Virus record (IMG/VR): IMGVR_UViG_3300027749_002876 | Location: 460,566 to 524,565 of that record | Direction: 5' to 3' (one strand) | DNA: 64,000 bases | Part shown: positions 33,036 to 62,608 of the stretch, in pieces | Layout: every line of letters begins with the position of its first letter | How positions within the stretch are numbered: position 1 is the first letter of the stretch | Notes under the pieces: model-generated | Told to the model about the DNA's origin: nothing | Seen by the model: only the letters and a program-made list of their open reading frames with translations | The model's database searches: none | Made by a program: the position numbers and the translations under genes

Positions 33036-33911
33036 ATGAGAATTAACGAATTTATAACAGAGTCTAGTAAGATTTGCCCACAATGTGGAATGAGAGGTTG
33101 CACGTGCAAACCTGGAAAATGTAATTGCAAACCAAAGCCTGGTTATCCAAAACAGGTTGATGAAGCCGCTAATCCAGCACAACAAGCCGCTATAGCTATT
33201 GCTATGAAAAAAGCTGGTAAAAAGCCAAAAAATATGCATGAAGAAGATGAGGGTATGTTTGGTAGATCCAAAAACGATAAACGATATTTAGATAAATTTG
33301 ATCCAACTGAAGTTATGAATATCAGTGATGATCCTAGTAAGGCACATAAAACAACGGGCAAGGGTTCATTAAGAACATCTAAGAAAGATTTAGAATTTGC
33401 ATTTGGACCACCCGGAGAAGATGATACATGGGTTTTAGAATTTAAGAATGGTTTAATTGCCACTATATACCCACAATCTAACAGTGGTGGCATGGATTGG
33501 ATCATAGGTGGTAATCATACAAACACTGAAGATTTTGTACATATGGCTTATTCAGCCGCACTTGATGAAAAACTTGAAGAGGATTGGAACAAGGTCAACC
33601 AGAAAGACAAAACATCTGGTATGAGCCGTAAGGCAGTAAAAGCATATCGTAGAGAAAATCCAGGTAGCAAATTACAAACAGCAGTTACTACTAAACCTAG
33701 TAAATTAAAGCCTGGATCAAAAGCTGCCAAACGCCGTAAGAGTTTTTGTGCTAGAATGAGTGGTAACAAAGGTCCTATGAAAAAGCCTAATGGTAAACCT
33801 ACTCCCAAAGCATTAGCACTACGTAGATGGAATTGTGAGAGTGTAGAGCAAATGGAAGAATTGGTAATGTTAGCAGAACAATTTATCCGCAATCACAAGA
33901 CTAAACTTTAA
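33036..33911 (+). CDS. MRxxEF-leader modular late protein (putative head-internal polyprotein)
   Basis: MRINEFITE; Cys-rich module; AANPAQQAAIAIAMKK module; basic RRKSFCARM...ALRRWNC module; ATAAATA at 32973-32979. Confidence 0.65.
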   Translation: MRINEFITESSKICPQCGMRGCTCKPGKCNCKPKPGYPKQVDEAANPAQQAAIAIAMKKAGKKPKNMHEEDEGMFGRSKNDKRYLDKFDPTEVMNISDDPSKAHKTTGKGSLRTSKKDLEFAFGPPGEDDTWVLEFKNGLIATIYPQSNSGGMDWIIGGNHTNTEDFVHMAYSAALDEKLEEDWNKVNQKDKTSGMSRKAVKAYRRENPGSKLQTAVTTKPSKLKPGSKAAKRRKSFCARMSGNKGPMKKPNGKPTPKALALRRWNCESVEQMEELVMLAEQFIRNHKTKL

Positions 33912-34728
33912 GTAGTTCTTCTAAAGTATATAAGTTCTTCATATAGGGTGATACATTTTCTAGTACACTACTAGCAATGTCGCCCTTCCTTCTTGGGCCG
34001 TATTTCACGTTGAAGCTAACATCATTGACTTTTTGAAACTCATCAACAATCTCACTAACAGTATATCCTACTCCGTGACCTAAACATTCTACACTATTGC
34101 TAGGTTTCTCAATAGCTTGTTTTAATGAATCACATATCTCATTTACGTGTACATAGTCACGTACACAAGTACCATCAGGTGATACATCATAATCATTACC
34201 AAAAATTGTAAACTCTTTTGATTGCATGGCCATTATTAAATTATACATTAATCCATCGGGGTTAGTGGGAGCAAAGCCTTCGCTTCCAATAACATTATAA
34301 AATCTAAAGATTGTATATGGGGTTGCTCGATGGGTTGTACAATATTCTCTTACCACATCTTCTGCCGCACGTTTGCTGATACCATAAGCACTACAACAAT
34401 CTTGTGCGGCACCGGTGCTTGCAAAGATAAAGTTCTTTGTCTTAATCTTATTCAATACATTCATTGTACCATTCAAGTTAGTTATATAATATTGAATAGG
34501 TTTCTGCTCACTTTCACCCACATTAACTAACGCGGCCAAATGAATAACACAATCAAACTCATCTTCTAAACTAAAAGGTCGATTGATATCACAATGATAG
34601 AATGTATGCGGCGACTCTTGTGGTTCTACTTTATCTAAACCATACACTTGATATTCACCCTTCAATATCTTAGTAAGATGTGAACCAATGTAACCGCTAT
34701 TACCTGTTATTAAAACTTTTTTTACCAC
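33901..34728 (-). CDS. NAD-dependent epimerase/dehydratase (GalE-like)
   Basis: ITGNSGYIG, HLAA, YGISK, RFYNV, GTCVRDYVHV. Confidence 0.9.
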   Translation of the reverse strand: MVKKVLITGNSGYIGSHLTKILKGEYQVYGLDKVEPQESPHTFYHCDINRPFSLEDEFDCVIHLAALVNVGESEQKPIQYYITNLNGTMNVLNKIKTKNFIFASTGAAQDCCSAYGISKRAAEDVVREYCTTHRATPYTIFRFYNVIGSEGFAPTNPDGLMYNLIMAMQSKEFTIFGNDYDVSPDGTCVRDYVHVNEICDSLKQAIEKPSNSVECLGHGVGYTVSEIVDEFQKVNDVSFNVKYGPRRKGDIASSVLENVSPYMKNLYTLEELLKV

Positions 34729-36053
34729 TGAAATAATTCCTCACTAGTTTCTAATGCTGGTTCAAAGATCGGATCTTTGGTTAAATATGTGTCATTGTCT
34801 GTATAGATAACTCTAAATTTATGTTTGTTAGTCAACACACTGCGAACATCATCAATACAAATTACATTACGTCCTAAATTCTTAATGAAGTCAGTATGTG
34901 TAATAGTTGTTTCATTGCAAATTTTGGCTGTATTAGTGTTAGATTTTTTACTATCAAACTCATTAAAACAATTATTCCACTTATGAAACACAGTAGCTTC
35001 TTGTTCTTGTGCATGTTGTAATGATCCTAAGTTATACCATCTTTCTGCTTTTTCAAAAATATCATATAACTCTTTTGCTTTACTTGCCATGTCTTTCTTT
35101 GTGCATTTGTAAAAGAAATTATCATTGAAGTTTTTAGTCCAGCGTTGATTTTCTAATACCAGTGTGGGCAATTGAATATGTTGTTCATAGAAAGCCATAC
35201 CATAACTCTCAACAACACTAGGATTAAACGCAATACGACTAGACTTAATAAAATCTACTTTCTCTTGTCCAACAATACTAGCACGAACATCATACATGAC
35301 TCCTAGTTTAGACAATCTATCTTCAAACTTCTTTACACCATTAGGACTAGTCATAACCTTAACCGGTAGTTTAGTCTGCTCAATCAATTCAATAAACAAC
35401 TCAGGATTCTTACCTTCTTCCCATCGACCAACAAACAGTATCCCCTCACGTTCACCTGTGTACACAGTTAATAAGTCTGGTTCAGTAATAGGTATAGGAA
35501 GATGATAGGATGATTCATTTAAATGTAGTTGATTGAATTTACTTTGAGTTCCTATATCAATGTTTGTTGTGCTTAATTGTTGGCGCATCATCACATTGGT
35601 GTTGTGTAAGAATGGATTCTTAGTGTCTTTGAATATCTGGCTTTCTAAGTGAGTGTAGGCAATGATTTGAATACAATCCTCAAGACCCATAGTACTAGCT
35701 ACTTGCACAGTTTCATATGTATTACATACAAACGCATCGTATAAGTTATTCTCTAACGCTTTGATAATACTATTACGGAAATTAGCCATGCGTTCATAAC
35801 AGAATGTATCACCATACATAAAGATGTTGCTATGCTCAGTATAACGTAATGAATCAGCAGGCGATATGATATTAGCCGGAATAGATTTGATAAACTCATT
35901 ATCTTGCGGTTCTTTGTCAGTAATGATATCAACTTTAACATTATGACTATCCATTAACTCACAAAAACTTTTTGTAAATTGTCCTATGCCACCATGTGGT
36001 ATTAATGTTTGATAGCTTACTAAAAAGCCAATTCGTTTATCGTATGTTCTCAT
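34722..36053 (-). CDS. GT-B (GT4-like) glycosyltransferase
   Basis: HGGIG, LFVGRWEEGKN, PSVVESYGMAFYE. Confidence 0.85.
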   Translation of the reverse strand: MRTYDKRIGFLVSYQTLIPHGGIGQFTKSFCELMDSHNVKVDIITDKEPQDNEFIKSIPANIISPADSLRYTEHSNIFMYGDTFCYERMANFRNSIIKALENNLYDAFVCNTYETVQVASTMGLEDCIQIIAYTHLESQIFKDTKNPFLHNTNVMMRQQLSTTNIDIGTQSKFNQLHLNESSYHLPIPITEPDLLTVYTGEREGILFVGRWEEGKNPELFIELIEQTKLPVKVMTSPNGVKKFEDRLSKLGVMYDVRASIVGQEKVDFIKSSRIAFNPSVVESYGMAFYEQHIQLPTLVLENQRWTKNFNDNFFYKCTKKDMASKAKELYDIFEKAERWYNLGSLQHAQEQEATVFHKWNNCFNEFDSKKSNTNTAKICNETTITHTDFIKNLGRNVICIDDVRSVLTNKHKFRVIYTDNDTYLTKDPIFEPALETSEELFQW

Positions 36054-36227
36054 TTATCTTCTATAGTAGGTACATCTTGCCATTCAGTATATTCACGCTT
36101 TTTAGTAAAACTACCTTGAATAGTAGTTGTACTATAATCAGTTACTTCAATTTGTGTTCTATATTGTAACACTTTTTCAGGTCCGTCCCAACCGCTTCGG
36201 ACAAGATATCTTAATTCATACATATAT

Positions 36228-36464
36228 TTACCTTTTTAACAACCACATAATATGGGCATTTTTATCGTGCCAACTGTGTTCTAAACTAATTTCACTTGGT
36301 CCAGCATAGATACTGGTTAGTCTATAAGCCCACTTTAACCAAATACATTTACCTGACAAATCACAAGTTTCAGGCAACCATGCAAACTTTAAATCTGCAC
36401 CCAAGTATTTGTTACGATAGGAGTCATTGATACCCATACTATCTAGTGGCATAACTATCTCCAT
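36228..36464 (-). CDS. Hypothetical protein
   Basis: FAWLPETCDLSGKCIWL motif. Confidence 0.55.
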   Translation of the reverse strand: MEIVMPLDSMGINDSYRNKYLGADLKFAWLPETCDLSGKCIWLKWAYRLTSIYAGPSEISLEHSWHDKNAHIMWLLKR

Positions 36465-36706
36465 CGTAACATAAAATGAATATAATCTTTCTCATCTGTG
36501 AATTTGAACGTAGTTTCAAATCCATCATCTTGTGTATCTTTATATTCATACGTCCACCTAGATTTTGTTCTACCAGGACCAAAAGTATCAACACACCAAT
36601 CTAATGGATTATTTTTATCTCTTATAGAACCGTCTGGTCCCATATAGTGTTTCCAATAATCCCAAGATAATAAAGCAATGTGTTGATATTTTTTCATGTG
36701 CCCCAC
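36455..36706 (-). CDS. Hypothetical protein
   Basis: WCVDTFG...FKFTDEKDYIHFMLRW. Confidence 0.55.
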   Translation of the reverse strand: MGHMKKYQHIALLSWDYWKHYMGPDGSIRDKNNPLDWCVDTFGPGRTKSRWTYEYKDTQDDGFETTFKFTDEKDYIHFMLRWR

Positions 36707-37542
36707 TCGTTTTTGAAAAGAGGTACTTGAAGTCTATCACTGTACCGATAACCACGATTCATTGCTTCAATAGCAACATTCTTAGCATTTAAGTTATACA
36801 ATGATTCTACACCACCGCAAGGCATGAAGTATACAGGGCCTCTGAATCCACCATTACGAAATTCTAGTACAGCTTTGTCTGCTTCAATTGCATCTTCACT
36901 AGTAGCAATAACAAACTTAAGATACACAAAGCCAATACTTTCATATTGACGAATGATGTTAGGACAAATTGCTTCACTCCACTTCTCGCCACTGATACTT
37001 AGTTTAGGACTAACACTAAATGTTAATGCATTCTTTTCTCTGTTAATCTTCCATTGTTGTAGATAGATTGATAGGTCTTGACTTAGTTCTTGTGTACCAT
37101 TAGTTTCAAAAGTAATCTCTTTGAGACCTCTCATTTTTTCGTTTGAAAGTAATTCTGGATATGCTCTTTGCCATCCAAGAAGAGGTTCACCACCAGTGAT
37201 AACAAGGTGCTCATCCATCCAGCGACCGTGAGGAAGGATAGTAAGAATAGAGTCAACAATAGAAACGGTACTGAGCATAGGACTAAGATGCTTAAATCTA
37301 GAGTCCCACGAGGCGTAGGAATCGCAACCTGTACTGACAAGCGGTAAGGATTTATAATCTGTATAATCTTGTGCTTTAATCGCAATAACATCTCTTTCAC
37401 TACTCAATTCTCCTTTATTCATGCCGAAGCCACCACACGTAAAATTGCATCCATATGTTCTAAGGAAAATACTTGGTACTCCGATATATCGGCCTTCTCC
37501 TTGTATACTATAAAAAAGTTCACTTACTTTTATGCTTGTCAT
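36694..37542 (-). CDS. queE: 7-carboxy-7-deazaguanine synthase (radical SAM)
   Basis: ELFYSIQGEG, FLRTYGCNFTC...GCDS, ITGGEP, FETNGT, SPKL. Confidence 0.92.
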   Translation of the reverse strand: MTSIKVSELFYSIQGEGRYIGVPSIFLRTYGCNFTCGGFGMNKGELSSERDVIAIKAQDYTDYKSLPLVSTGCDSYASWDSRFKHLSPMLSTVSIVDSILTILPHGRWMDEHLVITGGEPLLGWQRAYPELLSNEKMRGLKEITFETNGTQELSQDLSIYLQQWKINREKNALTFSVSPKLSISGEKWSEAICPNIIRQYESIGFVYLKFVIATSEDAIEADKAVLEFRNGGFRGPVYFMPCGGVESLYNLNAKNVAIEAMNRGYRYSDRLQVPLFKNEWGT

Positions 37543-38083
37543 TAATATGTTCTTTCAAATCATTCATTGATATATAGAGTTTTTCACAAATGAAGCCCTC
37601 TTTCTTTCGTTTACTATCGGATAAGCACCATCCCCTAATAGTTGTCTCATGTACATCGTAATATTTAGCCGCATGCCCCATTGAAGGGAATATACCATCA
37701 GGCGTAGTCACCATCATTTTCCAATTAGGTCTATCATTGTGAATTATACGTTCAATTGAATCTAAAACTGCAGGTACCTTATAGTCTCTTTTTAAGTATT
37801 CTACTGCATTTAACAGATTTTGTAAATCATCTTGGAACTTCCCGAGAGCCATATTACAGTTGGTGCAAAGTAAACCTCTTACTTTTTTTGTAACATGACA
37901 ATGATCCACTGCTAAATCCCTATTACATATATCAAGTTTATTACAAATCGCACAGCCATGATTTTGTTCTACCAACATTGCTTCGTACTGGTCGGCATTA
38001 ATTCCAAAATCTTTCATCAAATCTGACCTTTTTCGGCGTTTGTTAGTTCGTTCTTTACTATTGAGTGTTTTTTGCTTAATCAT
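37520..38083 (-). CDS. Endonuclease VII-like HNH homing endonuclease
   Basis: CAIC...LAVDHCH...VRGLLCTNCNMALG; C-terminal NUMOD/HTH-like segment; TATAAATA and AAGGAG upstream. Confidence 0.85.
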   Translation of the reverse strand: MIKQKTLNSKERTNKRRKRSDLMKDFGINADQYEAMLVEQNHGCAICNKLDICNRDLAVDHCHVTKKVRGLLCTNCNMALGKFQDDLQNLLNAVEYLKRDYKVPAVLDSIERIIHNDRPNWKMMVTTPDGIFPSMGHAAKYYDVHETTIRGWCLSDSKRKKEGFICEKLYISMNDLKEHINDKHKSK

Positions 38084-38130
38084 TATTATCTCCTTATATG
38101 TATTTATACAAGGTGACGGTAGAGTAAGAT

Positions 38131-38184
38131 TTAACCCTCTCCTTGGATGCTATAAAATAATTCTGATACTTTTAAATGATTCAT
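38131..38184 (-). pseudogene. Orphaned duplicate of the queE 5' end (17 codons)
   Basis: MNHLKVSELFYSIQGEG-stop; matches QueE start MTSIKVSELFYSIQGEG. Confidence 0.85.
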
Positions 38185-38399
38185 TTGATTTTTAAATTGT
38201 AATTTTTTAAAATAACTTCAGCGTATGTACCGCCACCTTGTTTATAAACACCATTAACTTGCTTTGCACAATCCCTGATTAATAGTTCAGCAAACTTTTC
38301 AATACTTTCTTCATCATCAGTTTGACCTGCGACAGATGCTCGTTTGAGCGCCCAGTCAAAACCTGCTTCTTTTGCCAGGTCTTCTATTTTTTTATTCAT
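38181..38399 (-). CDS. Small protein, EKFAELIV paralogue family
   Basis: NKKIEDLAKEAG...EKFAELLIRDC. Confidence 0.65.
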   Translation of the reverse strand: MNKKIEDLAKEAGFDWALKRASVAGQTDDEESIEKFAELLIRDCAKQVNGVYKQGGGTYAEVILKNYNLKIK

Positions 38400-38402
38400 A
38401 TA

Positions 38403-38594
38403 TTACCAATGATGTAAAGTGTTTGCTATGATGAAACAACATGTTATCACATGTAGCACCACCCAGAAAGTTTTTAGGAACAATGCGATTTTTGCTTCAC
38501 CTAATGTAAGAATAGGTACATCAGGCCTGTCATCATCGGTATTACCCATTAGATGACCGGTTGCTCTTGCCCATATTTTTTCTAAGCTATTCAT
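38403..38594 (-). CDS. Small membrane protein
   Basis: KIWARATG...C-terminal TM ending HHW. Confidence 0.6.
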   Translation of the reverse strand: MNSLEKIWARATGHLMGNTDDDRPDVPILTLGEAKIALFLKTFWVVLHVITCCFIIANTLHHW

Positions 38595-39010
38595 TAAGCT
38601 ACCTCGTCTTTATTGTTGTTAGGATATTTTGCACTAGTATATCTAATAACTAATACGCTTATTGCGATAACAAATGTAGAGCCGGCTACAGCTAACATTT
38701 CAATAACATTGATTGGCTGATGACTCATTATATCTACCATATGCCGTGTCAGTGCTGTTATTGCAATGTATAGCAGGAACCTGACAGGCATATGATTGGT
38801 CTTGAAATAAATGCCCACCATTGCACCTATTTCCAAATAGATAAACATTAATAACAAGTCACCGACTGTTGCGTGATGTTTTTGAAACATTTCAGCGAAG
38901 GTCCAACCGGCAGCCCATACTGTTGCGGCACCGATACCAAACAATGCAAGCCTATGAAATATGTCTACTAAGGTATGTCCTACCTTATCTACCATTTCTG
39001 TTTTCAACAT
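38594..39010 (-). CDS. psiE: Phosphate-starvation-inducible PsiE-like membrane protein
   Basis: DLLLMFIYLEIGAMVGIYFKTNHMPVRFLLYIAITALTR. Confidence 0.85.
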   Translation of the reverse strand: MLKTEMVDKVGHTLVDIFHRLALFGIGAATVWAAGWTFAEMFQKHHATVGDLLLMFIYLEIGAMVGIYFKTNHMPVRFLLYIAITALTRHMVDIMSHQPINVIEMLAVAGSTFVIAISVLVIRYTSAKYPNNNKDEVA

Positions 39011-39492
39011 TATTCAAACTCTCTATCTTCACGATGACCGCCACGTCCTGCCATGTTGCTATCAGTCTCACGTACCTCTACTCTACAGCACCATACACGT
39101 TTAGCTTCTTCGCTACCACAGTTGGGTAAGAAGATTGTGTTGATGTATTCATATAAAAAGTCAGCAATACCTTCACAACCAGTGCGTTCTACTTCTGTGA
39201 TCTTTGCTAGTTTCAATCTACCTAGTTCTAATAGATGTTCACGCATTGGGTCATCTTGTGCGACTAATAATGTATGGTCAAACCATTCTTCTAGTTTATC
39301 TTTGAGTGGGCGTAGTCCACCAAAATCAGTTACCCAGTTACGGGCATCCAATGTATCAGCTTCAAACTCAAAGTGAAAACTCATAGCATAGCCATGAATT
39401 AAATTACAATGACTGTCAGCACGCCATTGACGATATGCGACAGGACCTATTTGTCTGTATGTCTTTGTTGAAAAGAATTTTTTGTTTGCCAT
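39010..39492 (-). CDS. queD: 6-carboxytetrahydropterin synthase (QueD/PTPS family)
   Basis: SHCNLIHGY, DFGGL, FDHT, GCE, VEVRET. Confidence 0.88.
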   Translation of the reverse strand: MANKKFFSTKTYRQIGPVAYRQWRADSHCNLIHGYAMSFHFEFEADTLDARNWVTDFGGLRPLKDKLEEWFDHTLLVAQDDPMREHLLELGRLKLAKITEVERTGCEGIADFLYEYINTIFLPNCGSEEAKRVWCCRVEVRETDSNMAGRGGHREDREFE

Positions 39493-39573
39493 GTTTTCTC
39501 CTATGTTGTATTATAGCATAGGCGGCAGAGTTTGTAAAGCGGGAGTGACGCCAAGACCGCTACTTTTATTTAA
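39490..39573 (-). promoter_or_regulatory. Structured queD leader: preQ1-I-like pseudoknot, SD-sequestering hairpin and internal sigma70 promoter
   Basis: AGCGG-UCUUGGCGUCACUC-CCGCU-UUACAAA-CUCUGCCGCC; CCUAUG/CAUAGG over SD; TTTACA-17-TATAAT at 39510-39538. Confidence 0.55.
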
Positions 39574-40272
39574 CAAAAAACCCATAACCTCTTCTTTATT
39601 AAGAATTAAATTAAATGGATCAGTTTTAATAGATTTTTCTCCTAAATATTTGAATTTTGTATTGTAGATTTTTTCCATGTCTGAATAGATAGATTCATAT
39701 TTTACTTTTTTATATTCAATATTGTGTAATATTATAGACAAATTCTTTTCCCATAATAGGTGACTATTATAAATTTCAGTTAATCCATTATTCAGACGAT
39801 TAATATCAATTGTTGCAGGTTCATTGATTTCACTATTGATTCCAAATACGTTTTTTAGGTTGTTAGCATATGAGCGGGCAATCATAAAACTTAACAATTG
39901 TTCTTTAATATCTCTTGTCAATGTGATAAATTCAAAACCTATATTTTTTAACTCTATTATTATTTTAGATAATGTTTCCTTATCATAATGATCCATCAAA
40001 AAAATTCTTACAGTTAATGATTGGTTTATATTTGTATTTTTTAATAAATTAAGTCGTTCTTCAAATCCTTCAAATATTTTAAAGTTTGAAGGAATGCTAG
40101 CAAAATTCTTTAATCTTATATTATTGTCATCATCAGTCACATATTCACTGCGATTCCAATTTTCAAAATACTCGCCCAATTGAAAGCTTGATTTTATTTC
40201 TCCGGATAATTTTTCACACAATTGACTACCTGTTCTGGGTAAACAAATAATACATGTTCTGTTGCCGTTCAT
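39511..40272 (-). CDS. Sulfotransferase-like (Stf0/P-loop) protein
   Basis: LPRTGSQ (PAPS-binding-like), LGEYF, LTRDIKEQLLS, VKYE. Confidence 0.6.
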   Translation of the reverse strand: MNGNRTCIICLPRTGSQLCEKLSGEIKSSFQLGEYFENWNRSEYVTDDDNNIRLKNFASIPSNFKIFEGFEERLNLLKNTNINQSLTVRIFLMDHYDKETLSKIIIELKNIGFEFITLTRDIKEQLLSFMIARSYANNLKNVFGINSEINEPATIDINRLNNGLTEIYNSHLLWEKNLSIILHNIEYKKVKYESIYSDMEKIYNTKFKYLGEKSIKTDPFNLILNKEEVMGFLLNKSSGLGVTPALQTLPPML

Positions 40273-41063
40273 TTTAATCCTAAATTTTTCCTAATTTTAG
40301 TTGCACTGATATTATGTGTAGCATCATCAAATATTTCTTGCTCAATCTTATAACCAACATCACGACCGTATGTAATATTCACAATGTTTGGTACAATTTG
40401 AATTTCGTATTGACCTTGATATAACATATCTAAGTCACGTTTAATAAAACTTTTAACTTGTTCGATGGCAAATGGATTACTTCCTTGCCAACCTTGACAG
40501 TCACGTATTTGTATAACTACTTGCCCAGTCTTAGCAATAGCCCGTTCAAACAACTTACGATGTCCTTCATGCCATGGTTGCCAACGACCTAGCATCTGTA
40601 CTGTTTCTTTCTGCCAATCAAACACTGGTCTGCGTCTATTATCTAATATGTGTGCGGCAATAAACTCACCCCACTTTTCACCTTTTTGTTCAGTAATTCT
40701 AAAGTCATATACTTCTGGTGGGATAAATGCTTTGTTAGTATCGTCAAATCTACCTTTATCAATAGTATCAACCCATACAGTCCAATCTGCTTTAAAGTTA
40801 TTACGCATTTCAACTAATGGTGCAACAAAGTCACATATAACATAATCACATTCAATCATATTATCTGCTAGTTCACGCATACGTAAACTTTGACGAACAC
40901 GACCTTCTGTGCTAAAGTCCCAATCGTTATACTTTTTTCGTACATCGTCAGCATTTAGCCAACCTACTTTTTTCTTATCCGCTTGTAGGTGCTCTACAAT
41001 ATGTTGTGCTATATAAGTTTTACCTGCGCCAGGCAGGCCCATTACTAATATTCTTTTAGGCAT
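40269..41063 (-). CDS. Adenylylsulfate-kinase-like domain fused to HxGH nucleotidyltransferase domain
   Basis: GLPGAGKT, LNADDVR, FSTEGR; GRWQPWHEGH, ISATKIR. Confidence 0.8.
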   Translation of the reverse strand: MPKRILVMGLPGAGKTYIAQHIVEHLQADKKKVGWLNADDVRKKYNDWDFSTEGRVRQSLRMRELADNMIECDYVICDFVAPLVEMRNNFKADWTVWVDTIDKGRFDDTNKAFIPPEVYDFRITEQKGEKWGEFIAAHILDNRRRPVFDWQKETVQMLGRWQPWHEGHRKLFERAIAKTGQVVIQIRDCQGWQGSNPFAIEQVKSFIKRDLDMLYQGQYEIQIVPNIVNITYGRDVGYKIEQEIFDDATHNISATKIRKNLGLK

Positions 41064-41523
41064 TTTTGTTTTTCTCCGCTTCTGCTACACGTTTGCGTAG
41101 ACTTGAACTGCTAAAACTATGGTCACGTTTGTTAAATATAACCTGTACACCACGGCCTGCACCCTCATTACGTCCGGTAAAATTCTTATCCTCATACTCT
41201 GTACCCAAAATACGAACATCTAACGGTAGAATCAATAACAAGTCAATTAAGTCTTGTTCAGTTTGATATACCACTACTTCATCAACATAGCGACAAGCCG
41301 CAAGTTGAATCTGTCGTTCTACAATACTTTGAATAGGTTTATTCTTAGTATCAGGTCTATCAATGGTTGGATCGGTTTGTAGCCCACAAATCAAGTAATC
41401 ACAATGATTTTTTGCTTCACTTAACATAGCAACGTGACCTGCATGAAGCATATCAAATGTGCTAAAAGTAATACCAATCTTTTTACCCTGTGCTTTTAAT
41501 TCTTTAATATGATTGAAAATCAT
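41056..41523 (-). CDS. Glycerol-3-phosphate cytidylyltransferase-like (TagD family)
   Basis: TFDMLHAGH, YVDEV, SSSSLR; start revised to MIFNH. Confidence 0.85.
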   Translation of the reverse strand: MIFNHIKELKAQGKKIGITFSTFDMLHAGHVAMLSEAKNHCDYLICGLQTDPTIDRPDTKNKPIQSIVERQIQLAACRYVDEVVVYQTEQDLIDLLLILPLDVRILGTEYEDKNFTGRNEGAGRGVQVIFNKRDHSFSSSSLRKRVAEAEKNKNA

Positions 41524-41765
41524 TTTGAAAGTGTTCTCCACATTTTAGTTTGTTCATGTTCTTTTAAGAATTCATCCTCACCCGTAAATGTAGGTGCATC
41601 ATTCATAATCTCATCCAATAACCATTTCAATTTATGTAAATCTTTTTTGATTTCAAATGTAGTAAATCCATCGTTATACGGACTGTGAAGTTCTACACCT
41701 GCAATGTAGATTTGATGATGTACACTATTATAATCCATTGGTTTTTTAAATCCCATTATTTGCAA
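41520..41765 (-). CDS. Hypothetical protein
   Basis: [13 protein letters not shown] motif. Confidence 0.6.
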
Positions 41766-42436
41766 CCTTTATTTGCAATCTGCAAAAACTCTTGTCTTGC
41801 GGCTGGATCTGTTTTGAATCCACCACCTAGACGGCAGGTAGTTGTACTTGAACCAGTATCTTCTACACCTCGGGCCGCAACACAATAATGCCTGGCATCA
41901 ATCATTACAGCTACATCTTCTGTTTCTAGTATATAACATAGTGAATGAAAAATTTGTTCAGTTAATCGTTCTTGTATTTGCGGGCGCTTACTGAAATATT
42001 CTACTATACGGTTGATTTTACTAAGGCCTAGTACCTTATCCTTTGGTACATAAGCAACGGTAGCCAAACCCGCAATAGTAATAAAATGATGTTCACATGA
42101 ACTTTGTACATTGACATTGCGTTCAACAACCATTTCATTATATTTCATTTTATTTTCTACAGTAGTACATTTTGGAAATGCTTCATAATCTAGTCCGTAG
42201 AAAATTTCATTTACATACATCTTAGCAACACGCTTGGGTGTCTCAATTAGACTATCATCAGATAAATCTAAACCAAGATATTGCATAATAATAGTGAAGT
42301 GTTCTTCAATACGATCAATCTTATCTTTTCTGTCTAAGTTGTTTGGCAATGTAGGAGTCTCAACTCCCATTTTGACTAAGTGCTGATGCACTTGTTGACC
42401 CAACTCTGGATCTGTTTTTGTTTTATTATAACTCAT
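41756..42436 (-). CDS. folE: GTP cyclohydrolase I
   Basis: [39 protein letters not shown]; start revised to MSYNK. Confidence 0.95.
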
Positions 42437-42502
42437 AGATAACCTTCCTTTGTGATGGTTTTGTTTTGATATTGTGTTACCATTGTGTAACACAAGTATT
42501 TA

Positions 42503-42715
42503 TCACTTTGTTTTAGCAACTGATTTTTTTGATTTAGCCTTAACTGCAGGCTTCATATTAGCTAATTCTACACTAGCACAAGCTTCACGCACCTCATTAA
42601 CTAATGCGTCCCAATCCCATTTTAATTCAGTACGACCATCAGGAAAAGTAGTCACAGTTAAGTGACTACCTTTAACTACTGTTGGTTCTGCAAGTTGAAT
42701 TTTCTTGCGAGCCAT
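42503..42715 (-). CDS. Hypothetical protein
   Basis: 70-aa ORF in operon. Confidence 0.6.
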   Translation of the reverse strand: MARKKIQLAEPTVVKGSHLTVTTFPDGRTELKWDWDALVNEVREACASVELANMKPAVKAKSKKSVAKTK

Positions 42716-42717
42716 GG

Positions 42718-42912
42718 TTAAGCCTTAGCTTTTGCTTCTGCTCTTGCGGCTTTTTCTGCTGTAATTTCATTACGGCGAGCCTTAACTGCTTTAGCTAGTT
42801 CTGCTAATGCTTTACGTGCCCTAGTACCGGCGGCTGCATTACCCTTGTTAAATTTATCGTTCTCAGCATTGTATGCTTCTAAACTATTTTCAATATCATT
42901 TTGTGCGCTCAT
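42718..42912 (-). CDS. Histone H1-like (Hc1-type) DNA-binding protein
   Basis: KFNKGNAAAGTRARKALAELAK...RRNEI; start MSAQND after AAGGAG. Confidence 0.8.
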   Translation of the reverse strand: MSAQNDIENSLEAYNAENDKFNKGNAAAGTRARKALAELAKAVKARRNEITAEKAARAEAKAKA

Positions 42913-42922
42913 AATTTTCTCC

Positions 42923-44122
42923 TTAATATTTTGCTTCACGGGTGTGTTTGCGATAATCACTATCCATACGCAACCATTGTTGTCCGTTACCTTCTAGGAT
43001 ATCACAAATTCTATCGATTGTACTGTCAGTCCAATCACTAATCTTTCCTTGATTTACATGCGGTTGATGTAACATATTATATAACTTAATTGTTGCATCT
43101 TCAACACTCCAGGGCGTATACAGTCTTGTATAGTCATTCGCAAATGTTTCTGGGAAACTGCGATATGCCGGATACAATACATTGCAACCCAAACTATCTG
43201 CTTCACTGACTGTGTTACTCACCCAGTCTTGTAATGCACAATTAAACAATACTCTTGTATCATTTAATAACTCATAGTATGCGTTCTTATCTAGGTCTTG
43301 ATATACTTTTAATAGTCCACGATTTTGCATATCTTGTGTACGTTTCATGTAACTATCGTTATTGCTTTTTAGTTTACTACCGCTGAACACACAGAATTCT
43401 ACACCACGATATACACCATGACGATCCTTCTCACCGTACCGGTTATAGAATTCTTCAATCACATCCATGTAGAAGTCAGGTTGCTTTTCTTGATCCCATC
43501 TAGCACTAAATGCAATACGCATTGTACGTTCATTGAATGGCTTGATGACATTATTTACACGGCTACGAACTTCTTCTTTGCCAAATGCTAAGCCTGAGAT
43601 ATTGTAGATCGGTGCCTTCCAACCCGCAATCTTCATATGCATTACCATTTCTTCATTACTAGCAAGTACACCATCAACGAATGAATCAACCATCTTTTCA
43701 TAGTGACCCATGAACTCACTCATGCCCCATACATGTACGAAATCATCCGGATCGATTGACTGAGCAAGACAACGGACAAATATACGAGGACGGAGATTAA
43801 TAGGAACTTGCTTAAGTATATAAGGAAGACTTTCAATGCCCGGCTGAAACATATCTTCAAAGTATACAATATCTTCATAACTACACTCACCTTTTTTCAT
43901 CATCTTTACTAGATTCATTAATTGACTCATACCAAAGTATGTACGTCCATGAGCATCTAATACTTGTCCGGTAACAATAGCTTGGTCATCACTTAATGTT
44001 TCGCCGGGAACGATAACATAGTTAATGCCTCTACGTTTGAATACACGTTCATTCCAGTCTTGTAACTGTAGTGTGTATCTTGCTTTGTAAGGCTCTAGGC
44101 CCATATAAAATAACTTATGCAT
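42923..44122 (-). CDS. GT-B glycosyltransferase (phage type)
   Basis: FSARWDQEKQP, CALQDWVSNTVSEA, PAYRSFPE. Confidence 0.75.
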   Translation of the reverse strand: MHKLFYMGLEPYKARYTLQLQDWNERVFKRRGINYVIVPGETLSDDQAIVTGQVLDAHGRTYFGMSQLMNLVKMMKKGECSYEDIVYFEDMFQPGIESLPYILKQVPINLRPRIFVRCLAQSIDPDDFVHVWGMSEFMGHYEKMVDSFVDGVLASNEEMVMHMKIAGWKAPIYNISGLAFGKEEVRSRVNNVIKPFNERTMRIAFSARWDQEKQPDFYMDVIEEFYNRYGEKDRHGVYRGVEFCVFSGSKLKSNNDSYMKRTQDMQNRGLLKVYQDLDKNAYYELLNDTRVLFNCALQDWVSNTVSEADSLGCNVLYPAYRSFPETFANDYTRLYTPWSVEDATIKLYNMLHQPHVNQGKISDWTDSTIDRICDILEGNGQQWLRMDSDYRKHTREAKY

Positions 44123-44873
44123 TTTCTCTTTCTATATCTAGTTCATCACATTCTTCACCATACTGTATTTCTACAATACGACATGGTGTATCATATGGAT
44201 TACTTAGTTGATGCCAATCACCTTGTGAAATTTTTACTTGACCAAACGTTGACAATTCAATTGGAAGTAAACTGTAACCACTTGACAATTTTGTATATAG
44301 TATACACTTACCTTCTGTAACATGCCAAAATTCACTTCGTTTAAAATGCCGTTGCATACTTAAACTTTGACCCGGCTCTACTGTTAGTTCTTTTACTTTA
44401 CATCCACTTACATCATGTAGTATACGATAGTATCCCCACTGACGCAATGTTTTAGGTTGTTTCCATTCACGTAGTATCCAACTACTACTGTTCTTTTTGT
44501 CATCCCCACCCACACCAAATACAAATTCTACATCATCAAATATCATTTCGGGAATGTTATCTTTAGTTCTATCTCCCCCATTAGCAAATATAATATTTGT
44601 TTTTGGGTACATTTCTTTGACTTTGCGAATGGCATCAATGGCGGTATCATCACTATCATCAAACTCTATTACTTTATGCACTTGATGTAAATTTTCAATG
44701 ATTATTTTACGTTCTTGAATAGGCATAAAAGGTTGACCTTTTTTACGGGTCAACCATGCGTCACTATTAACTCCTACTATCAGTAAGAAACCTAAATGCT
44801 TAGCGGAATTGAAATATTCAATATGGCCACTATGCAAGGGGTCAAAGCCCCCAGTGACTAACACTATCTTCAT
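44115..44873 (-). CDS. Cytidylyltransferase fused to mannose-6-phosphate-isomerase-type cupin
   Basis: TGGFDPLHSGH, FANGGDR, NSSS; RQWGYY, LSMQRH, WHQLSNP, EIQYG. Confidence 0.88.
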   Translation of the reverse strand: MKIVLVTGGFDPLHSGHIEYFNSAKHLGFLLIVGVNSDAWLTRKKGQPFMPIQERKIIIENLHQVHKVIEFDDSDDTAIDAIRKVKEMYPKTNIIFANGGDRTKDNIPEMIFDDVEFVFGVGGDDKKNSSSWILREWKQPKTLRQWGYYRILHDVSGCKVKELTVEPGQSLSMQRHFKRSEFWHVTEGKCILYTKLSSGYSLLPIELSTFGQVKISQGDWHQLSNPYDTPCRIVEIQYGEECDELDIERENA

Positions 44874-45076
44874 GGACGCATATCCTCTTGCCATTGATCC
44901 TTAGCCCATTTGCCGGCAATTTGTTTTTGATGTTGACGGTATGCGAAACTCCGCATGTCATACAATGATGTTTCATCAAACTTGTACCCAAAGTCCTGAC
45001 AGAATTCAAGGTACTTTTCAAGATCCTCAAAAATCTGATTGATACGTGGGTTAGGTTGATATTGTTGTTTTGCCAT
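44870..45076 (-). CDS. Hypothetical protein
   Basis: IFEDLEKYLEFCQDFGYKFDE. Confidence 0.65.
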   Translation of the reverse strand: MAKQQYQPNPRINQIFEDLEKYLEFCQDFGYKFDETSLYDMRSFAYRQHQKQIAGKWAKDQWQEDMRP

Positions 45077-61466: not shown

Positions 61467-61904
61467 TTATTCACGGTTCTTTAATATACTACGCAACATC
61501 CAACTATGTTTTTCGTGTGCGTCTAGTCGTTCAGCAATGAAGTTTGCGATACCTTGTTTGTTCTCATCTTCAGCAGAAACAAAACAACCATTTAGTAAAT
61601 CAATCATCTTTTCATTATCAGATAATAACTCAGCAAACATTAAGTGTGGACGAGGAACTTTAAGTTGGTCCTCAATGATAGTTAGTTCTGCATAACGTGA
61701 CAAACTACCCGGTGCATAGCTATCTAGTGTGCGAATATACTCTCCAATCGGGTCAATGGAATTATACACCTCAGCATAAAAATCACCTAAAAACTTGTGG
61801 TATTGCGGGAAGTTATCACCCTCTATATTAAAATGAAAACCATGTATTTTTACATAAAATGCAAAAGTACTACCTAACAATACCTTAAGATTATCTACTA
61901 ACAT
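61467..61904 (-). CDS. dps: Dps/ferritin-like DNA protection protein
   Basis: HGFHFNIEGDNFPQYH, IDPIGEYIR, HEKHSWMLRS. Confidence 0.88.
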   Translation of the reverse strand: MLVDNLKVLLGSTFAFYVKIHGFHFNIEGDNFPQYHKFLGDFYAEVYNSIDPIGEYIRTLDSYAPGSLSRYAELTIIEDQLKVPRPHLMFAELLSDNEKMIDLLNGCFVSAEDENKQGIANFIAERLDAHEKHSWMLRSILKNRE

Positions 61905-62011: not shown

Positions 62012-62608
62012 TTGACTATTTATTCAACTTCGGACCATCGTAAGATTTACGAAACACACATTGGTCCAATTCCAAAAGACATAGAAGGTCGTAGTTATGA
62101 AATTCATCATATTGACGGAAATCACAATAACAATGAATTGTCAAATTTATTGTGTGTTTCTATTAGAGAACACTATGAAATACATAAATCTCAGGGAGAC
62201 CTTAAGGCTTGTTTAATTATGTCTCAAAGAATGGGTGTTTCCCCTGAAGAAAAATCACACCTAGCAAAATTATCAAATACAGGAAAAAATAATCCAATGT
62301 ATGGTACTATTTGGATTAACGACGGAATTATTAATAAGAAAATTCGCGGAGATATACCCGAAGGCTGGGCACGAGGCAGATTAATATCACACGAACACGC
62401 TTCAAAATTTACAAAACGATCCAAAGTTGGTACTAATAACACTAGATTTAATAAGACAATTTATTGTTTTGAGAATATTAAAACACTAGAACAAATTCAT
62501 AGTACATCATATGAGTTTGCTATTAAGTATGGAGTTAGCACTGTTGGAATAAGAGGTCTCATTCAAAAAAACAAGACCTCTTATAAGGGTTGGCGAATGG
62601 TTTTTTGA
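62012..62608 (+). CDS. Free-standing HNH homing endonuclease
   Basis: YEIHHIDGNHNNN...NL...EH...H; NUMOD-like GKNNPMYG, WINDG, KGW; opposite strand to neighbours. Confidence 0.88.
   Translation: MTIYSTSDHRKIYETHIGPIPKDIEGRSYEIHHIDGNHNNNELSNLLCVSIREHYEIHKSQGDLKACLIMSQRMGVSPEEKSHLAKLSNTGKNNPMYGTIWINDGIINKKIRGDIPEGWARGRLISHEHASKFTKRSKVGTNNTRFNKTIYCFENIKTLEQIHSTSYEFAIKYGVSTVGIRGLIQKNKTSYKGWRMVF

What the first reader, a model, noticed from the sequence alone, without database searches (positions are those of the whole stretch)
37492..38184. Homing endonuclease insertion that duplicated and replaced the start of queE
Seen: upstream of the EndoVII gene is a 17-codon ORF, MNHLKVSELFYSIQGEG-TAA (38131-38184), coupled by ATGA to the previous gene. 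Downstream, QueE begins MTSIKVSELFYSIQGEG. Thirteen residues are identical but codons differ (TCA/AGT, TTA/CTT, AGC/AGT, ATC/ATA, GAG/GAA, GGT/GGC). The insert brings its own TATAAATA promoter and SD. Inference: an intron-less way to invade an essential gene. The element lands in the conserved SIQGEG codons and supplies a recoded, cleavage-resistant N-terminus, so no splicing is needed.
Basis: partly seen in the sequence, partly recalled or inferred. Interest (0 to 1): 0.68.

Follow-up and report, generated by a model that had tools for sequence, protein, structure and literature searches.

The report
Homing endonuclease cassette replacing queE's start
A selfish nuclease gene has inserted into the start of a giant freshwater phage's queE gene. 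It brings a foreign replacement copy of the first ~28 codons, so the gene stays whole without splicing and the phage's own first 17 codons are left behind as a stub.

Summary

All features are on the minus strand, in this order:
- an upstream 72-aa gene;
- a 17-codon stub of queE, joined to that gene by ATGA (38184..38131);
- a conserved TATAAATA + AAGGAG block;
- a 187-aa EndoVII-family nuclease gene (38083..37520);
- a full-length queE (37542..36694), whose start overlaps the nuclease gene's end by 23 nt.

Related phage contigs settle the history. Nuclease-free relatives carry the stub's allele as the real start of one uninterrupted queE, with the same ATGA coupling. Homology stops exactly at the stub's last codon. 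In nuclease-bearing loci, the first ~84 nt of queE are 93-97% identical to each other but saturated at synonymous sites against the nearest nuclease-free relatives. The rest of the gene follows the host backbone.

All 20 metagenome homologues of the nuclease (58-100% identity) sit at this same place, and every locus whose upstream DNA is present shows at least a trace of a stub. Among intact stubs, codons 1-15 vary almost only synonymously and codons 16-17 vary freely. Other stubs are deleted.

Cleavage, resistance of the replacement allele and promoter use remain untested.

The closest known parallel is the endonuclease ORFs of fungal mitochondria that carry a foreign gene C-terminus. This is a phage version acting at the 5' end.

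The parts
38181..38399 (-). Upstream 72-aa gene of unknown function ('gX72'). It is the left flank of the insertion, and its TGA overlaps the stub's ATG (ATGA).
   Evidence: No Pfam match. In nuclease-free relatives L012-L015 it is 84% aa identical and coupled by the same ATGA directly to full-length queE.
38131..38184 (-). Displaced native 5' end of queE: a 17-codon stub plus a TAA that belongs to the element. The left junction lies between 38134 and 38133.
   Evidence: 48/51 nt identical to the queE start of L012/L013. Homology ends exactly after codon 17. Only 36/51 identical to the new start.
38088..38117 (-). Predicted RNA hairpin that pairs the nuclease gene's Shine-Dalgarno (AAGGAG, 38095..38090) with CACCTT. 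The TATAAATA (38108..38101) straddles the 5' arm and the loop.
   Evidence: Fold of -9.2 kcal/mol, z -2.0. Across 20 loci, 84% of cells pair against 37-62% in slid controls, with few double changes. TATAAATA is conserved in every cassette. The same design is described for I-TevI, segB and Aeh1 mobE (PMC2988022). Function is inferred.
37520..38083 (-). Free-standing endonuclease gene, 187 aa. The N-terminal part is an EndoVII/HNH-type (beta-beta-alpha-metal) nuclease; the C-terminal part is a helix-turn-helix-like domain.
   Evidence: Pfam PF02945 at E 6.6e-22. PDB sequence matches to Hpy99I (1.3e-7) and T4 endonuclease VII (2.4e-3). The D-H..H..N..N core columns (D60, H61, H63, N75, N77) are invariant in 19 homologues; C62 is kept in 18 of 19. 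dN/dS is 0.075-0.09. Model pLDDT is 86.6, and residues 118-168 best match the I-TevI DNA-binding domain at Z 5.0, rmsd 2.8 A, 47 aa, which is weak.
37550..37556 (-). Shine-Dalgarno-like GAAAGAA inside the nuclease ORF (its L-K-E codons), 8-14 nt before the queE ATG.
   Evidence: The same position reads AAAGGAA, GAAGGAA or AGAGGAA in the other nuclease-bearing loci. Function is inferred.
37459..37542 (-). Replacement 5' end of queE carried by the cassette (nt 1 to about 84). Nt 1-51 duplicate the stub, nt 52-84 replace native sequence, and nt 1-23 also encode the nuclease's C-terminal tail.
   Evidence: 93-97% identical to nuclease-bearing L047 and L028, but 61-76% identical to the nearest nuclease-free relatives. 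Identity switches at nt 80-95. dS is saturated over nt 4-84. Two Ser codons (Ser7, Ser24) switch between TCN and AGT.
36694..37542 (-). Full-length queE-like radical SAM gene (282 aa), intact.
   Evidence: Matches solved QueE structures 6nhl, 4njg and 5tgs, mainly through residues 5-38. NCBIfam QueE models hit but below their cut-offs. Phage homologues are annotated QueE. Body dN/dS against L006 is 0.08.
37459..38133 (-). The mobile cassette as a whole (about 675 bp): stop codon, promoter/SD block, nuclease gene, and the new translation start with the first ~28 codons of queE.
   Evidence: The left boundary comes from filled/empty comparison. The right boundary comes from mosaic breakpoints in five nuclease-bearing/nuclease-free pairs.
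39010..39492 (-). QueD (6-carboxytetrahydropterin synthase family), pathway context.
   Evidence: Pfam PTPS at E 8.7e-16. GTP cyclohydrolase I lies at 41756..42493.

Best explanation
This is a free-standing homing-endonuclease cassette sitting inside the 5' coding region of a phage queE gene. It needs neither an intron nor an intein.

The cassette is about 675 bp and consists of:
- an in-frame stop codon;
- a conserved TATAAATA plus Shine-Dalgarno block, probably folded so that the nuclease is translated only from late transcripts;
- an EndoVII/HNH-type nuclease with a helix-turn-helix-like DNA-binding tail;
- a ribosome-binding site embedded in the nuclease's last codons;
- a foreign, synonymously very divergent copy of queE codons 1 to about 28.

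Proposed cycle (inferred):
1. The nuclease cuts nuclease-free queE alleles somewhere near codons 15-30.
2. The right end of the break pairs with the donor's queE body beyond nt ~84.
3. The left end pairs with the donor's stub.
4. The whole cassette is copied in.
5. The recipient's own first ~15-17 codons remain upstream as a fresh stub, which later decays.

The divergent replacement 5' end keeps QueE complete and is presumably not cut. If the left end pairs instead with the replacement copy, the product is a nuclease-free chimeric allele.

Shown here: the anatomy, the insertion junctions, the foreign origin and joint movement of the nuclease gene with nt 1-84, its sporadic distribution, purifying selection on the nuclease, and renewal and decay of the stub.

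Inferred: cleavage, where it occurs, resistance of the replacement allele, late-only expression, and the stub's role as a homology arm.
For: 1. Filled and empty sites in two deeply separated lineages.
- Window against L013: homology runs through the flank and the stub to nt 51, then drops to 27%.
- L092 against L096: 1 mismatch in 128 nt up to stub nt 46, then unrelated sequence.

2. Mosaic structure. Window queE nt 1-75 is 97% and 93% identical to nuclease-bearing L047 and L028, but 61-76% identical to the most closely related nuclease-free loci. From nt ~90 this reverses: 85-96% to L003/L006/L010, about 71% to L047. The same breakpoint at nt ~82-90 appears in five nuclease-bearing/nuclease-free pairs. 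dS is saturated over nt 4-84, against 0.2-0.58 in the gene body.

3. Sporadic distribution.
- The nuclease is present in 4 of about 56 close queE loci.
- It is present in 1 of 80 loci of a second group.
- On the queE-body tree, at least 8 gains or losses are forced by well-supported branches. The window is nested (support 100) among 6 nuclease-free loci.

4. Site fidelity. All 20 metagenome homologues (58-100% aa) lie directly upstream of queE and overlap its start.

5. A live protein. dN/dS is 0.075-0.09, and the D-H..H..N..N core columns are invariant across 19 homologues.

6. Stub dynamics.
- Eleven intact stubs differ at codons 5-15 by 287 synonymous against 64 nonsynonymous pairwise codon changes.
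- Codons 16-17 vary freely: E/V, and G/K/R/H/Y/C.
- About ten loci have stubs with internal deletions or no ATG.

7. Predicted by-products exist. Nuclease-free chimeric alleles carry a native nt 1-20/28 joined to cassette-type sequence: L032, L037, L049, L101, L102.

8. No ribozyme family matches.

9. The regulatory design matches that of T4-type homing endonucleases.
Against: - No cleavage or inheritance data exist for this enzyme, so the target site is unknown.
- EndoVII-family proteins can also be Holliday-junction resolvases.
- The similarity of the C-terminal domain to I-TevI is weak (Z 5.0). Foldseek found nothing significant.
- TATAAATA is not enriched in the window. T4-type late transcription in this 524-kb phage was not shown.
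- The hairpin has little true covariation.
- Nuclease identity falls roughly in step with QueE identity across the deep lineages. Much of the association could therefore be vertical, with repeated loss rather than repeated gain.
- General phage recombination at a conserved stretch of nucleotides (nt 85-130) could produce the shared right breakpoint without nuclease action.
- Nuclease-free loci were sampled only around two queE lineages.
Confidence: 0.8

Rival explanations
1. There was one ancient insertion, then only vertical descent. The nuclease is now a domesticated or inert passenger. The patchy distribution reflects repeated loss, and the mosaics reflect ordinary phage recombination.
For: - Nuclease and QueE identities fall together across the deep lineages.
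- All loci share the same general junction and the same stop position at codon 18.
- The right breakpoint lies next to a very conserved stretch.
Against: - The window's queE body is nested among nuclease-free relatives (support 100). Its cassette is closest to those of L047 and L028, which sit in another clade.
- Stub codons 1-15 match the local nuclease-free allele (48/51 for the window, 46/46 for L092) and vary almost only synonymously. A stub decaying since one old event would not do this.
- The nuclease is under strong purifying selection.
Confidence: 0.12
2. The nuclease serves the phage, and is linked to queE for functional reasons. Possible roles are a Holliday-junction resolvase like T4 gp49, or a nuclease that attacks DNA lacking 7-deazaguanine.
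For: - Pfam Endonuclease_7, and a sequence match to T4 endonuclease VII.
- It is always adjacent to a 7-deazaguanine pathway gene.
- It is the only EndoVII-family gene in the 524-kb genome.
Against: - It is absent from the great majority of close relatives that keep the same pathway.
- The match to T4 endonuclease VII covers only the nuclease core.
- The C-terminal half resembles homing-endonuclease DNA-binding domains, not the gp49 dimerisation domain.
- Target duplication and a co-transferred foreign gene end are hallmarks of a selfish insertion.
Confidence: 0.05
3. The stub is exon 1, or a functional leader. Either it is joined to queE by RNA splicing or translational bypass, or the 17-residue peptide and its translation are needed in themselves.
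For: - The stub keeps its ATG, its frame and its ATGA coupling in the window and in ten other loci.
Against: - No Rfam match at E <= 1.
- Only 47 nt of the insert are non-coding, which leaves no room for a ribozyme core.
- Downstream queE has its own complete, family-typical N-terminus.
- Stubs without an ATG or with large deletions occur in loci whose queE is intact: L047, L028, L065, L066, L076, L077, L084, L086.
- Codons 16-17 are unconstrained.
Confidence: 0.03

Closest known systems
Mobile endonuclease ORFs of fungal mitochondria that carry a foreign gene terminus: Allomyces macrogynus atp6; Glomus atp6, atp9, cox2, nad3; Rhizopus atp9; Mortierella cox2 (as described in PMC3630166)
   Same: - An endonuclease ORF inserts into a conserved gene together with a divergent copy of the gene's end.
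- The hybrid gene stays functional.
- The native end remains beside it as a duplicate. That duplicate is nearly identical to the allele of endonuclease-free relatives.
- The differences between the two copies are mostly synonymous.
   Different: - Here it is a phage, not a mitochondrion.
- The 5' end (N-terminus) is replaced, not the 3' end. The cassette must therefore also supply a stop for the stub and a new translation start for the gene.
- The nuclease is EndoVII/HNH-type rather than LAGLIDADG or GIY-YIG.
- The nuclease is a separate ORF overlapping the gene out of frame, not fused in frame.
- The duplicate lies upstream.
Intronless homing by free-standing T4-type endonucleases (seg and mob genes; review PMC2988022)
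   Same: - A free-standing nuclease gene lies next to a conserved gene and is sporadic among relatives.
- Flanking sequence is co-converted.
- Its ribosome-binding site sits in a hairpin with a TATAAATA late-promoter motif.
- Expression signals of the neighbouring gene are embedded in the nuclease ORF, which favours retention.
   Different: - T4 seg and mob genes sit between genes and, per the review, cut hundreds to thousands of bp away.
- No duplication or replacement of part of the target gene is described for them.
- Here the insertion point is inside the coding sequence, and the likely target lies within about 100 bp.
Aeh1 mobE in nrdA, the 'genes in pieces' case (Friedrich et al. 2007; known to me and cited in PMC8351571 and PMC2988022; the paper itself is not held)
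   Same: An HNH-type free-standing endonuclease inserts inside a phage metabolic gene without an intron, and gene function is retained.
   Different: In Aeh1 the gene is split into two polypeptides that reassemble. Here nothing is split: the downstream ORF is complete, and the upstream piece is a dispensable 17-codon stub.
[quoted passage not shown]
   Same: - A two-domain design: nuclease plus helix-turn-helix DNA-binding module.
- Insertion within a conserved coding motif.
- Late-promoter and hairpin control.
   Different: There is no ribozyme and no splicing. Continuity of the gene is restored at the DNA level by a duplicated, recoded 5' end.

Membership tests
Free-standing homing endonuclease gene (intronless homing) | Encodes a nuclease of a known homing-endonuclease fold with an intact active site | tested here: met
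   Pfam Endonuclease_7 at E 6.6e-22. Core columns D60, H61, H63, N75, N77 are invariant in 19 homologues. dN/dS is about 0.08.
Free-standing homing endonuclease gene (intronless homing) | A separate sequence-specific DNA-binding module | tested here: inconclusive
   Residues 118-168 of the model best match the I-TevI DNA-binding domain (Z 5.0, rmsd 2.8 A, 47 aa) and I-HmuI (Z 3.9). Pfam HTH_17 scores only E 0.027. These scores are within the range of chance folds.
Free-standing homing endonuclease gene (intronless homing) | Present or absent among close relatives at one fixed site | tested here: met
   4 of about 56 and 1 of 80 queE loci carry it. At least 8 changes are needed on the tree. All 20 metagenome homologues sit at the queE start.
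Free-standing homing endonuclease gene (intronless homing) | Flanking marker co-conversion, seen as mosaic flanks that travel with the gene | tested here: met
   queE nt 1 to ~84 travels with the nuclease across different backbones.
Free-standing homing endonuclease gene (intronless homing) | Cuts the endonuclease-free allele and is inherited preferentially | not testable with these tools
   This needs protein and DNA substrates or crosses. No RNA or experimental data exist for this uncultured phage.
Endonuclease ORF carrying a replacement gene terminus (Allomyces atp6 type) | The inserted copy of the gene end is divergent, while the displaced native copy matches endonuclease-free relatives | tested here: met
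   Stub 48/51 to L013 and 46/46 to L096. New start 35/51 to L013 and 49/51 to nuclease-bearing L047.
Endonuclease ORF carrying a replacement gene terminus (Allomyces atp6 type) | The 3' (C-terminal) end of a mitochondrial gene is replaced, often with an in-frame ORF fusion | tested here: not met
   Here the 5' end of a phage gene is replaced. The nuclease is a separate ORF overlapping queE by 23 nt in another frame.
Group I intron with an endonuclease ORF | A ribozyme core flanking the ORF, with exons joined in the RNA | tested here: not met
   No Rfam family matches at E <= 1 over 36000-39500. Only 47 nt are non-coding. The 'exon 1' is degraded in many loci. RNA joining itself was not testable.
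T4 gp49-type Holliday-junction resolvase | Full-length similarity including the dimerisation domain, and conservation as a core gene | tested here: not met
   The PDB match to T4 endonuclease VII covers only query residues 37-102, at E 2.4e-3. The gene is absent from most close relatives.
Genes in pieces (Aeh1 nrdA/mobE) | The target gene is split into two ORFs that are both needed | tested here: not met
   Downstream queE is full length (282 aa) with the family's N-terminal motif. The upstream piece is dispensable.
QueE (7-carboxy-7-deazaguanine synthase) | The family's N-terminal substrate motif, radical SAM core and pathway neighbours | tested here: inconclusive
   Residues 5-38 match solved QueE structures (E 4e-7). 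Five NCBIfam QueE models hit, but far below their cut-offs (51 bits against 206). FolE and QueD lie nearby. It is a divergent QueE-like enzyme, and its activity is not shown.

The most novel reading that the evidence does not exclude
The upstream stub is not mere debris. It would be the cassette's portable left homology arm, and this would be a distinct way for a homing endonuclease to live inside a coding sequence.

The region upstream of queE is hypervariable among these phages. The 45-51 nt stub is therefore the only homology reliably present to the left of the break. Each invasion would renew it from the recipient. The strong synonymous divergence of the replacement copy would steer repair toward the stub, so that the nuclease gene is copied, while also protecting the allele from cleavage.

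Because queE's ribosome-binding site and start codon lie inside the nuclease ORF, simple deletion of the nuclease would also silence queE. That would be an addiction-like lock.
Probability: 0.4. Interest if true: 0.75.

Novelty: new variant of a known kind. Interest (0 to 1): 0.62.

Why it matters
Homing endonucleases are thought to survive inside essential or useful genes only by hiding in self-splicing introns or inteins, by sitting between genes, or rarely by splitting a gene into two working pieces. This cassette shows a further solution in a phage. It inserts within the most conserved codons of a gene and repairs the damage at the DNA level, by bringing its own copy of the gene's start together with a stop, a promoter and a ribosome-binding site.

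The family is abundant in lake phage metagenomes. It offers many natural filled, empty, chimeric and decayed sites, so the gain, decay and loss cycle of a homing endonuclease can be read directly from sequence.

It also matters in practice:
- Annotation will call such stubs spurious small ORFs.
- Phylogenies of queE will be distorted by the foreign first ~84 nt.
- A compact nuclease with a probable target in a conserved QueE motif could be a useful reagent.

Tried and rejected
- **DNA search of the phage collection.** A search with 36600-38700 found nothing. Only distant QueE proteins (45% or less) are present there.
- **Rfam.** No family at E <= 1 over 36000-39500, so the intron idea was dropped.
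- **RNAalifold.** It gave no consensus structure on 20 promoter/SD blocks. A hand-specified hairpin was tested instead and got only moderate support.
- **TATAAATA enrichment.** Not supported in the window: 4 sites against 8.8 expected. Whether this phage has T4-type late transcription was not established.
- **Foldseek.** Nothing significant for the whole nuclease model against PDB. The wide VIA search gave only weak matches.
- **L104.** I suspected that nuclease-free L104, which has a cassette-type queE start, keeps a fragment of the nuclease gene upstream. On reading it, the upstream DNA looks like an unrelated gene.
- **Operator-like site.** I compared by eye the cassette's promoter/SD region with the queE target region, looking for a site of the I-TevI autorepression kind. 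The resemblance in the window's group (about 11 of 14 nt) is not kept in the second group, so I dropped it.
- **RNA evidence.** No RNA run holds this DNA. The runs laid were contigs only, so transcript starts and splicing could not be examined.
- **Literature.** Searches for a phage precedent of a duplicated or replaced 5' end found none. This is absence in the held library, not proof of novelty. Friedrich 2007 and Belle 2002 are not held and are cited from memory and from reference lists.
- **Big protein searches.** Not used, because the locus scans gave enough relatives.
Full report
**What is there**

The window is the last 64 kb of a 524,565-bp virus record from a freshwater metagenome. Around the finding nearly all genes are on the minus strand. 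Reading that strand, the order is:

1. A 72-aa gene of unknown function (38399..38181).
2. A 17-codon ORF, MNHLKVSELFYSIQGEG-TAA (38184..38131). Its ATG overlaps the previous stop as ATGA.
3. 47 non-coding nt holding TATAAATA (38108..38101) and AAGGAG (38095..38090).
4. A 187-aa ORF (38083..37520).
5. A 282-aa ORF (37542..36694) starting MTSIKVSELFYSIQGEG. Its first 23 nt overlap the end of the 187-aa ORF in another frame.

The 187-aa protein matches Pfam Endonuclease_7 over residues 23-98 at E 6.6e-22. Among solved structures it matches the beta-beta-alpha-metal nucleases Hpy99I and T4 endonuclease VII.

The 282-aa protein is a divergent QueE-like radical SAM enzyme:
- It matches solved QueE structures mainly through residues 5-38, exactly the segment that is duplicated.
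- It hits five NCBIfam QueE models, all below their cut-offs.
- Its phage homologues are annotated QueE.
- QueD (39010..39492) and GTP cyclohydrolase I (41756..42493) lie nearby.

**Is it real, and more than chance?**

The stub and the new start share 36 of 51 nt and 14 of 17 residues.

The arrangement is not an assembly artefact. Identical sequence occurs in two IMG/VR contigs from other samples (L001, L002). Two further independent freshwater runs each hold a 1302-nt contig spanning 37150-38451 without a single difference.

**Empty sites**

A scan of viral contigs with QueE returned 61 related loci at 72-100% aa identity. Only four carry the nuclease gene: L001 and L002, which are identical to the window, plus L047 and L028.

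In L012-L015 the same upstream gene (84% aa) is coupled by the same ATGA to a single full-length queE. Its first 51 nt are 48/51 identical to the window's stub.

Aligning the window to L013, identity is 80% through the upstream gene and about 92-94% through the stub. It falls to 27% immediately after the stub's last codon. That defines the left junction between 38134 and 38133.

**A cassette that moves**

The first 75 nt of the window's queE are 97% and 93% identical to those of nuclease-bearing L047 and L028. They are only 61-76% identical to the nuclease-free loci most closely related in the rest of the gene. From about nt 90 the pattern reverses: 85-96% to L003/L006/L010, about 71% to L047.

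In five pairs of a nuclease-bearing locus with its nearest nuclease-free relative, mismatches are dense up to nt 82-90 and then sparse. For L093 against L050 there are 26 mismatches in nt 1-90, then 7 in nt 91-300.

Synonymous divergence over nt 4-84 is saturated, while the gene body has dS 0.2-0.58 and dN/dS about 0.08. Two serine codons (Ser7, Ser24) have switched between the TCN and AGT families.

So the replacement segment is foreign, extends to about nt 84 (37459), and travels with the nuclease gene. On a tree of queE nt 100-846, presence of the nuclease needs at least 8 changes. The window is nested with support 100 among six nuclease-free loci.

**The nuclease family is tied to this site**

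A metagenome scan with a four-sequence profile found 20 loci with homologues of 58-100% identity. Every one lies directly upstream of queE and ends 14-35 nt inside it.

The proteins are full length. The D-H..H..N..N core columns are invariant across 19 homologues (C62 is kept in 18 of 19), and dN/dS is 0.075-0.09. This is a working protein, not a relic.

An AlphaFold model built on 19 sequences (pLDDT 86.6) shows an N-terminal nuclease and a small C-terminal strand-plus-helix-turn-helix domain. The best structural matches of that domain are the DNA-binding domains of the intron endonucleases I-TevI (Z 5.0, rmsd 2.8 A, 47 residues) and I-HmuI (Z 3.9). These scores are low and count only as a hint.

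**The stub is renewed, then decays**

Every nuclease-bearing locus whose upstream DNA is present has at least a trace of a queE 5' stub in front of the cassette.

Eleven loci have an intact 16-17-codon ORF. Among them, codons 5-15 differ by 287 synonymous against 64 nonsynonymous pairwise codon changes. The nonsynonymous ones are the V/I, S/A and I/V polymorphisms of functional queE. Codons 16 and 17, just before the stop, vary freely: E or V, and G, K, R, H, Y or C.

A second scan, with the QueE of the distant locus L092, gave 80 loci of which only one (L094, matching L092 itself) carries the nuclease. Its close nuclease-free relative L096 matches L092's upstream flank and stub with 1 mismatch in 128 nt, up to stub nt 46. 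After that the two are unrelated. The boundary between gene-like and free evolution in the stub therefore coincides with an observed junction.

The simplest reading has two parts:
- Codons 1-15 are captured afresh from a functional recipient gene at each invasion.
- The last two codons and the stop belong to the element.

About ten other loci show stubs with internal deletions, no ATG, or fusion to the upstream gene: L047/L075, L028, L065, L066, L076, L077, L079, L084, L085, L086. An old stub is therefore not maintained, and the peptide is not needed.

**By-products**

Some nuclease-free loci have a native-type nt 1-20/28 joined to cassette-type sequence up to about nt 84 (L032, L037, L049, L101, L102). 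This is what break repair would give if the left end paired with the replacement copy instead of the stub. It could also arise by loss of the nuclease through recombination between the two copies.

Cassette-type 5' alleles also occur in phages with no trace of the nuclease (L104, L147, L027; also a variant contig in run X5). The 'recoded' start was therefore probably borrowed from a divergent natural allele rather than built for the purpose.

**Expression signals (inferred)**

The TATAAATA is conserved in all 21 cassettes listed; two have CATAAATA. In the RNA fold, the Shine-Dalgarno sequence pairs with CACCTT upstream, and the TATAAATA straddles the 5' arm and the loop (-9.2 kcal/mol, z -2.0).

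Across 20 loci, 84% of cells keep the pairs, against 37-62% when the partner is slid. Only three pairs change on both sides.

The same design limits translation of I-TevI, segB and Aeh1 mobE to late transcripts (PMC2988022). However, TATAAATA is not enriched in the window, and T4-type late transcription was not shown for this phage.

Inside the nuclease's last codons (L-K-E) lies an SD-like AAGGAA or GAAAGAA, 8-14 nt before the queE ATG in all loci. The cassette therefore also supplies queE's translation start. Its most conserved stretches are the promoter block and the last ~50 nt of the nuclease ORF plus queE nt 1-72.

**Mechanism proposed**

Shown:
- an insertion at codon 15-17 of queE;
- the content of the cassette;
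- joint horizontal movement of the nuclease gene and queE nt 1-84;
- renewal and decay of the stub.

Inferred:
1. The nuclease cuts nuclease-free alleles near codons 15-30.
2. The right end of the break pairs with the donor's queE body.
3. The left end pairs with the donor's stub.
4. The replacement copy escapes cutting.

The region between QueD and queE holds anything from zero to several different small genes in the relatives. The stub may therefore be the only dependable homology to the left of the break.

**Rivals**

- *Purely vertical history with losses.* It fits the parallel fall of nuclease and QueE identity in the deep lineages. It does not fit the window's mosaic or the local-allele stubs.
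- *Resolvase or modification-sensing nuclease serving the phage.* It is contradicted by the gene's absence from most close relatives and by the target duplication.
- *Splicing, bypass or a functional leader peptide.* It is contradicted by the missing ribozyme, the complete downstream gene and the degraded stubs.

**Comparison with what is known**

The closest parallel is the mobile endonuclease ORFs of fungal mitochondria that carry a foreign C-terminal piece of atp6, atp9, cox2 or nad3 and leave the native C-terminus as a duplicate. This was first seen in Allomyces macrogynus (PMC3630166).

The logic here is the same but mirrored to the 5' end. That forces the cassette to bring a stop codon, its own expression signals and a new translation start for the host gene. 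The host is a phage and the nuclease family is different.

It differs from T4 seg and mob genes, which sit between genes and cut far away (PMC2988022). It differs from Aeh1 mobE, which splits nrdA into two working pieces.

Five literature searches found no phage case with a duplicated and replaced 5' end. That is absence in the held library only.

**Verdict**

This is a new variant of a known kind of element. It is of moderate to good interest because it offers a natural series of filled, empty, chimeric and decayed sites.

Noticed in passing
window 62012..62608 (+): A second free-standing endonuclease-like gene (Pfam HNH_3, E 1.2e-10). It lies antisense between a ferritin-like gene (61467..61904, -) and a DUF5872-like gene (62609..64000, -). 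A place with the same score lies at G000:C1:175048-175185. The genome also holds three more HNH_3 and three GIY-YIG matches.
   Followed up: partly
window 38181..39010, and loci L001-L059 upstream of queE: The stretch between QueD and queE is hypervariable among close relatives. It holds anything from nothing (QueD directly followed by queE) to a PsiE-family gene, a 63-aa gene and differing versions of the 72-aa gene.
   Followed up: partly
L032, L037, L049 (queE nt 1-90); L101, L102: These are nuclease-free queE alleles that are chimeras: the first 20-28 nt are native-type, followed by cassette-type sequence to about nt 84. They could be footprints of break repair without nuclease gain, or of nuclease loss.
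   Followed up: partly
window 37470..37590 (-): The last ~50 nt of the nuclease ORF plus queE nt 1-72 are the most conserved part of the cassette at the nucleotide level. Identity to L075 and L028 is 92-100%, against 75-90% in most of the nuclease ORF. This includes third codon positions. The reason is unknown. Dual coding, queE's translation start, or a need to stay uncut are possibilities.
   Followed up: partly
window 37532, run X5: One freshwater run holds a contig in which cassette-type queE sequence is preceded by the end of QueD instead of by the nuclease gene. This is a nuclease-free phage with a cassette-type start, from a lake that also yields pieces of the window's own cassette.
   Followed up: no
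window 38594..39010 (-): A PsiE-family (phosphate-starvation-inducible E) membrane protein gene lies inside the phage's 7-deazaguanine gene cluster (Pfam E 3.7e-22). It is present in only some relatives.
   Followed up: no
window 33901..36053 and 40269..44894 (-): Sugar-nucleotide and nucleotidyl-transfer genes lie around FolE, QueD and QueE: an NAD-dependent epimerase/dehydratase, two cytidylyltransferase-like genes, a mannose-6-phosphate isomerase/cupin fusion, and an APS-kinase-like P-loop gene. This hints at a further elaborated modification.
   Followed up: no
L081:2424-2476 and upstream: In this locus the stub has no stop at codon 18. It reads on (..QGEGKGAFF..) into the promoter block. 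The in-frame stop is therefore not kept in every lineage.
   Followed up: no
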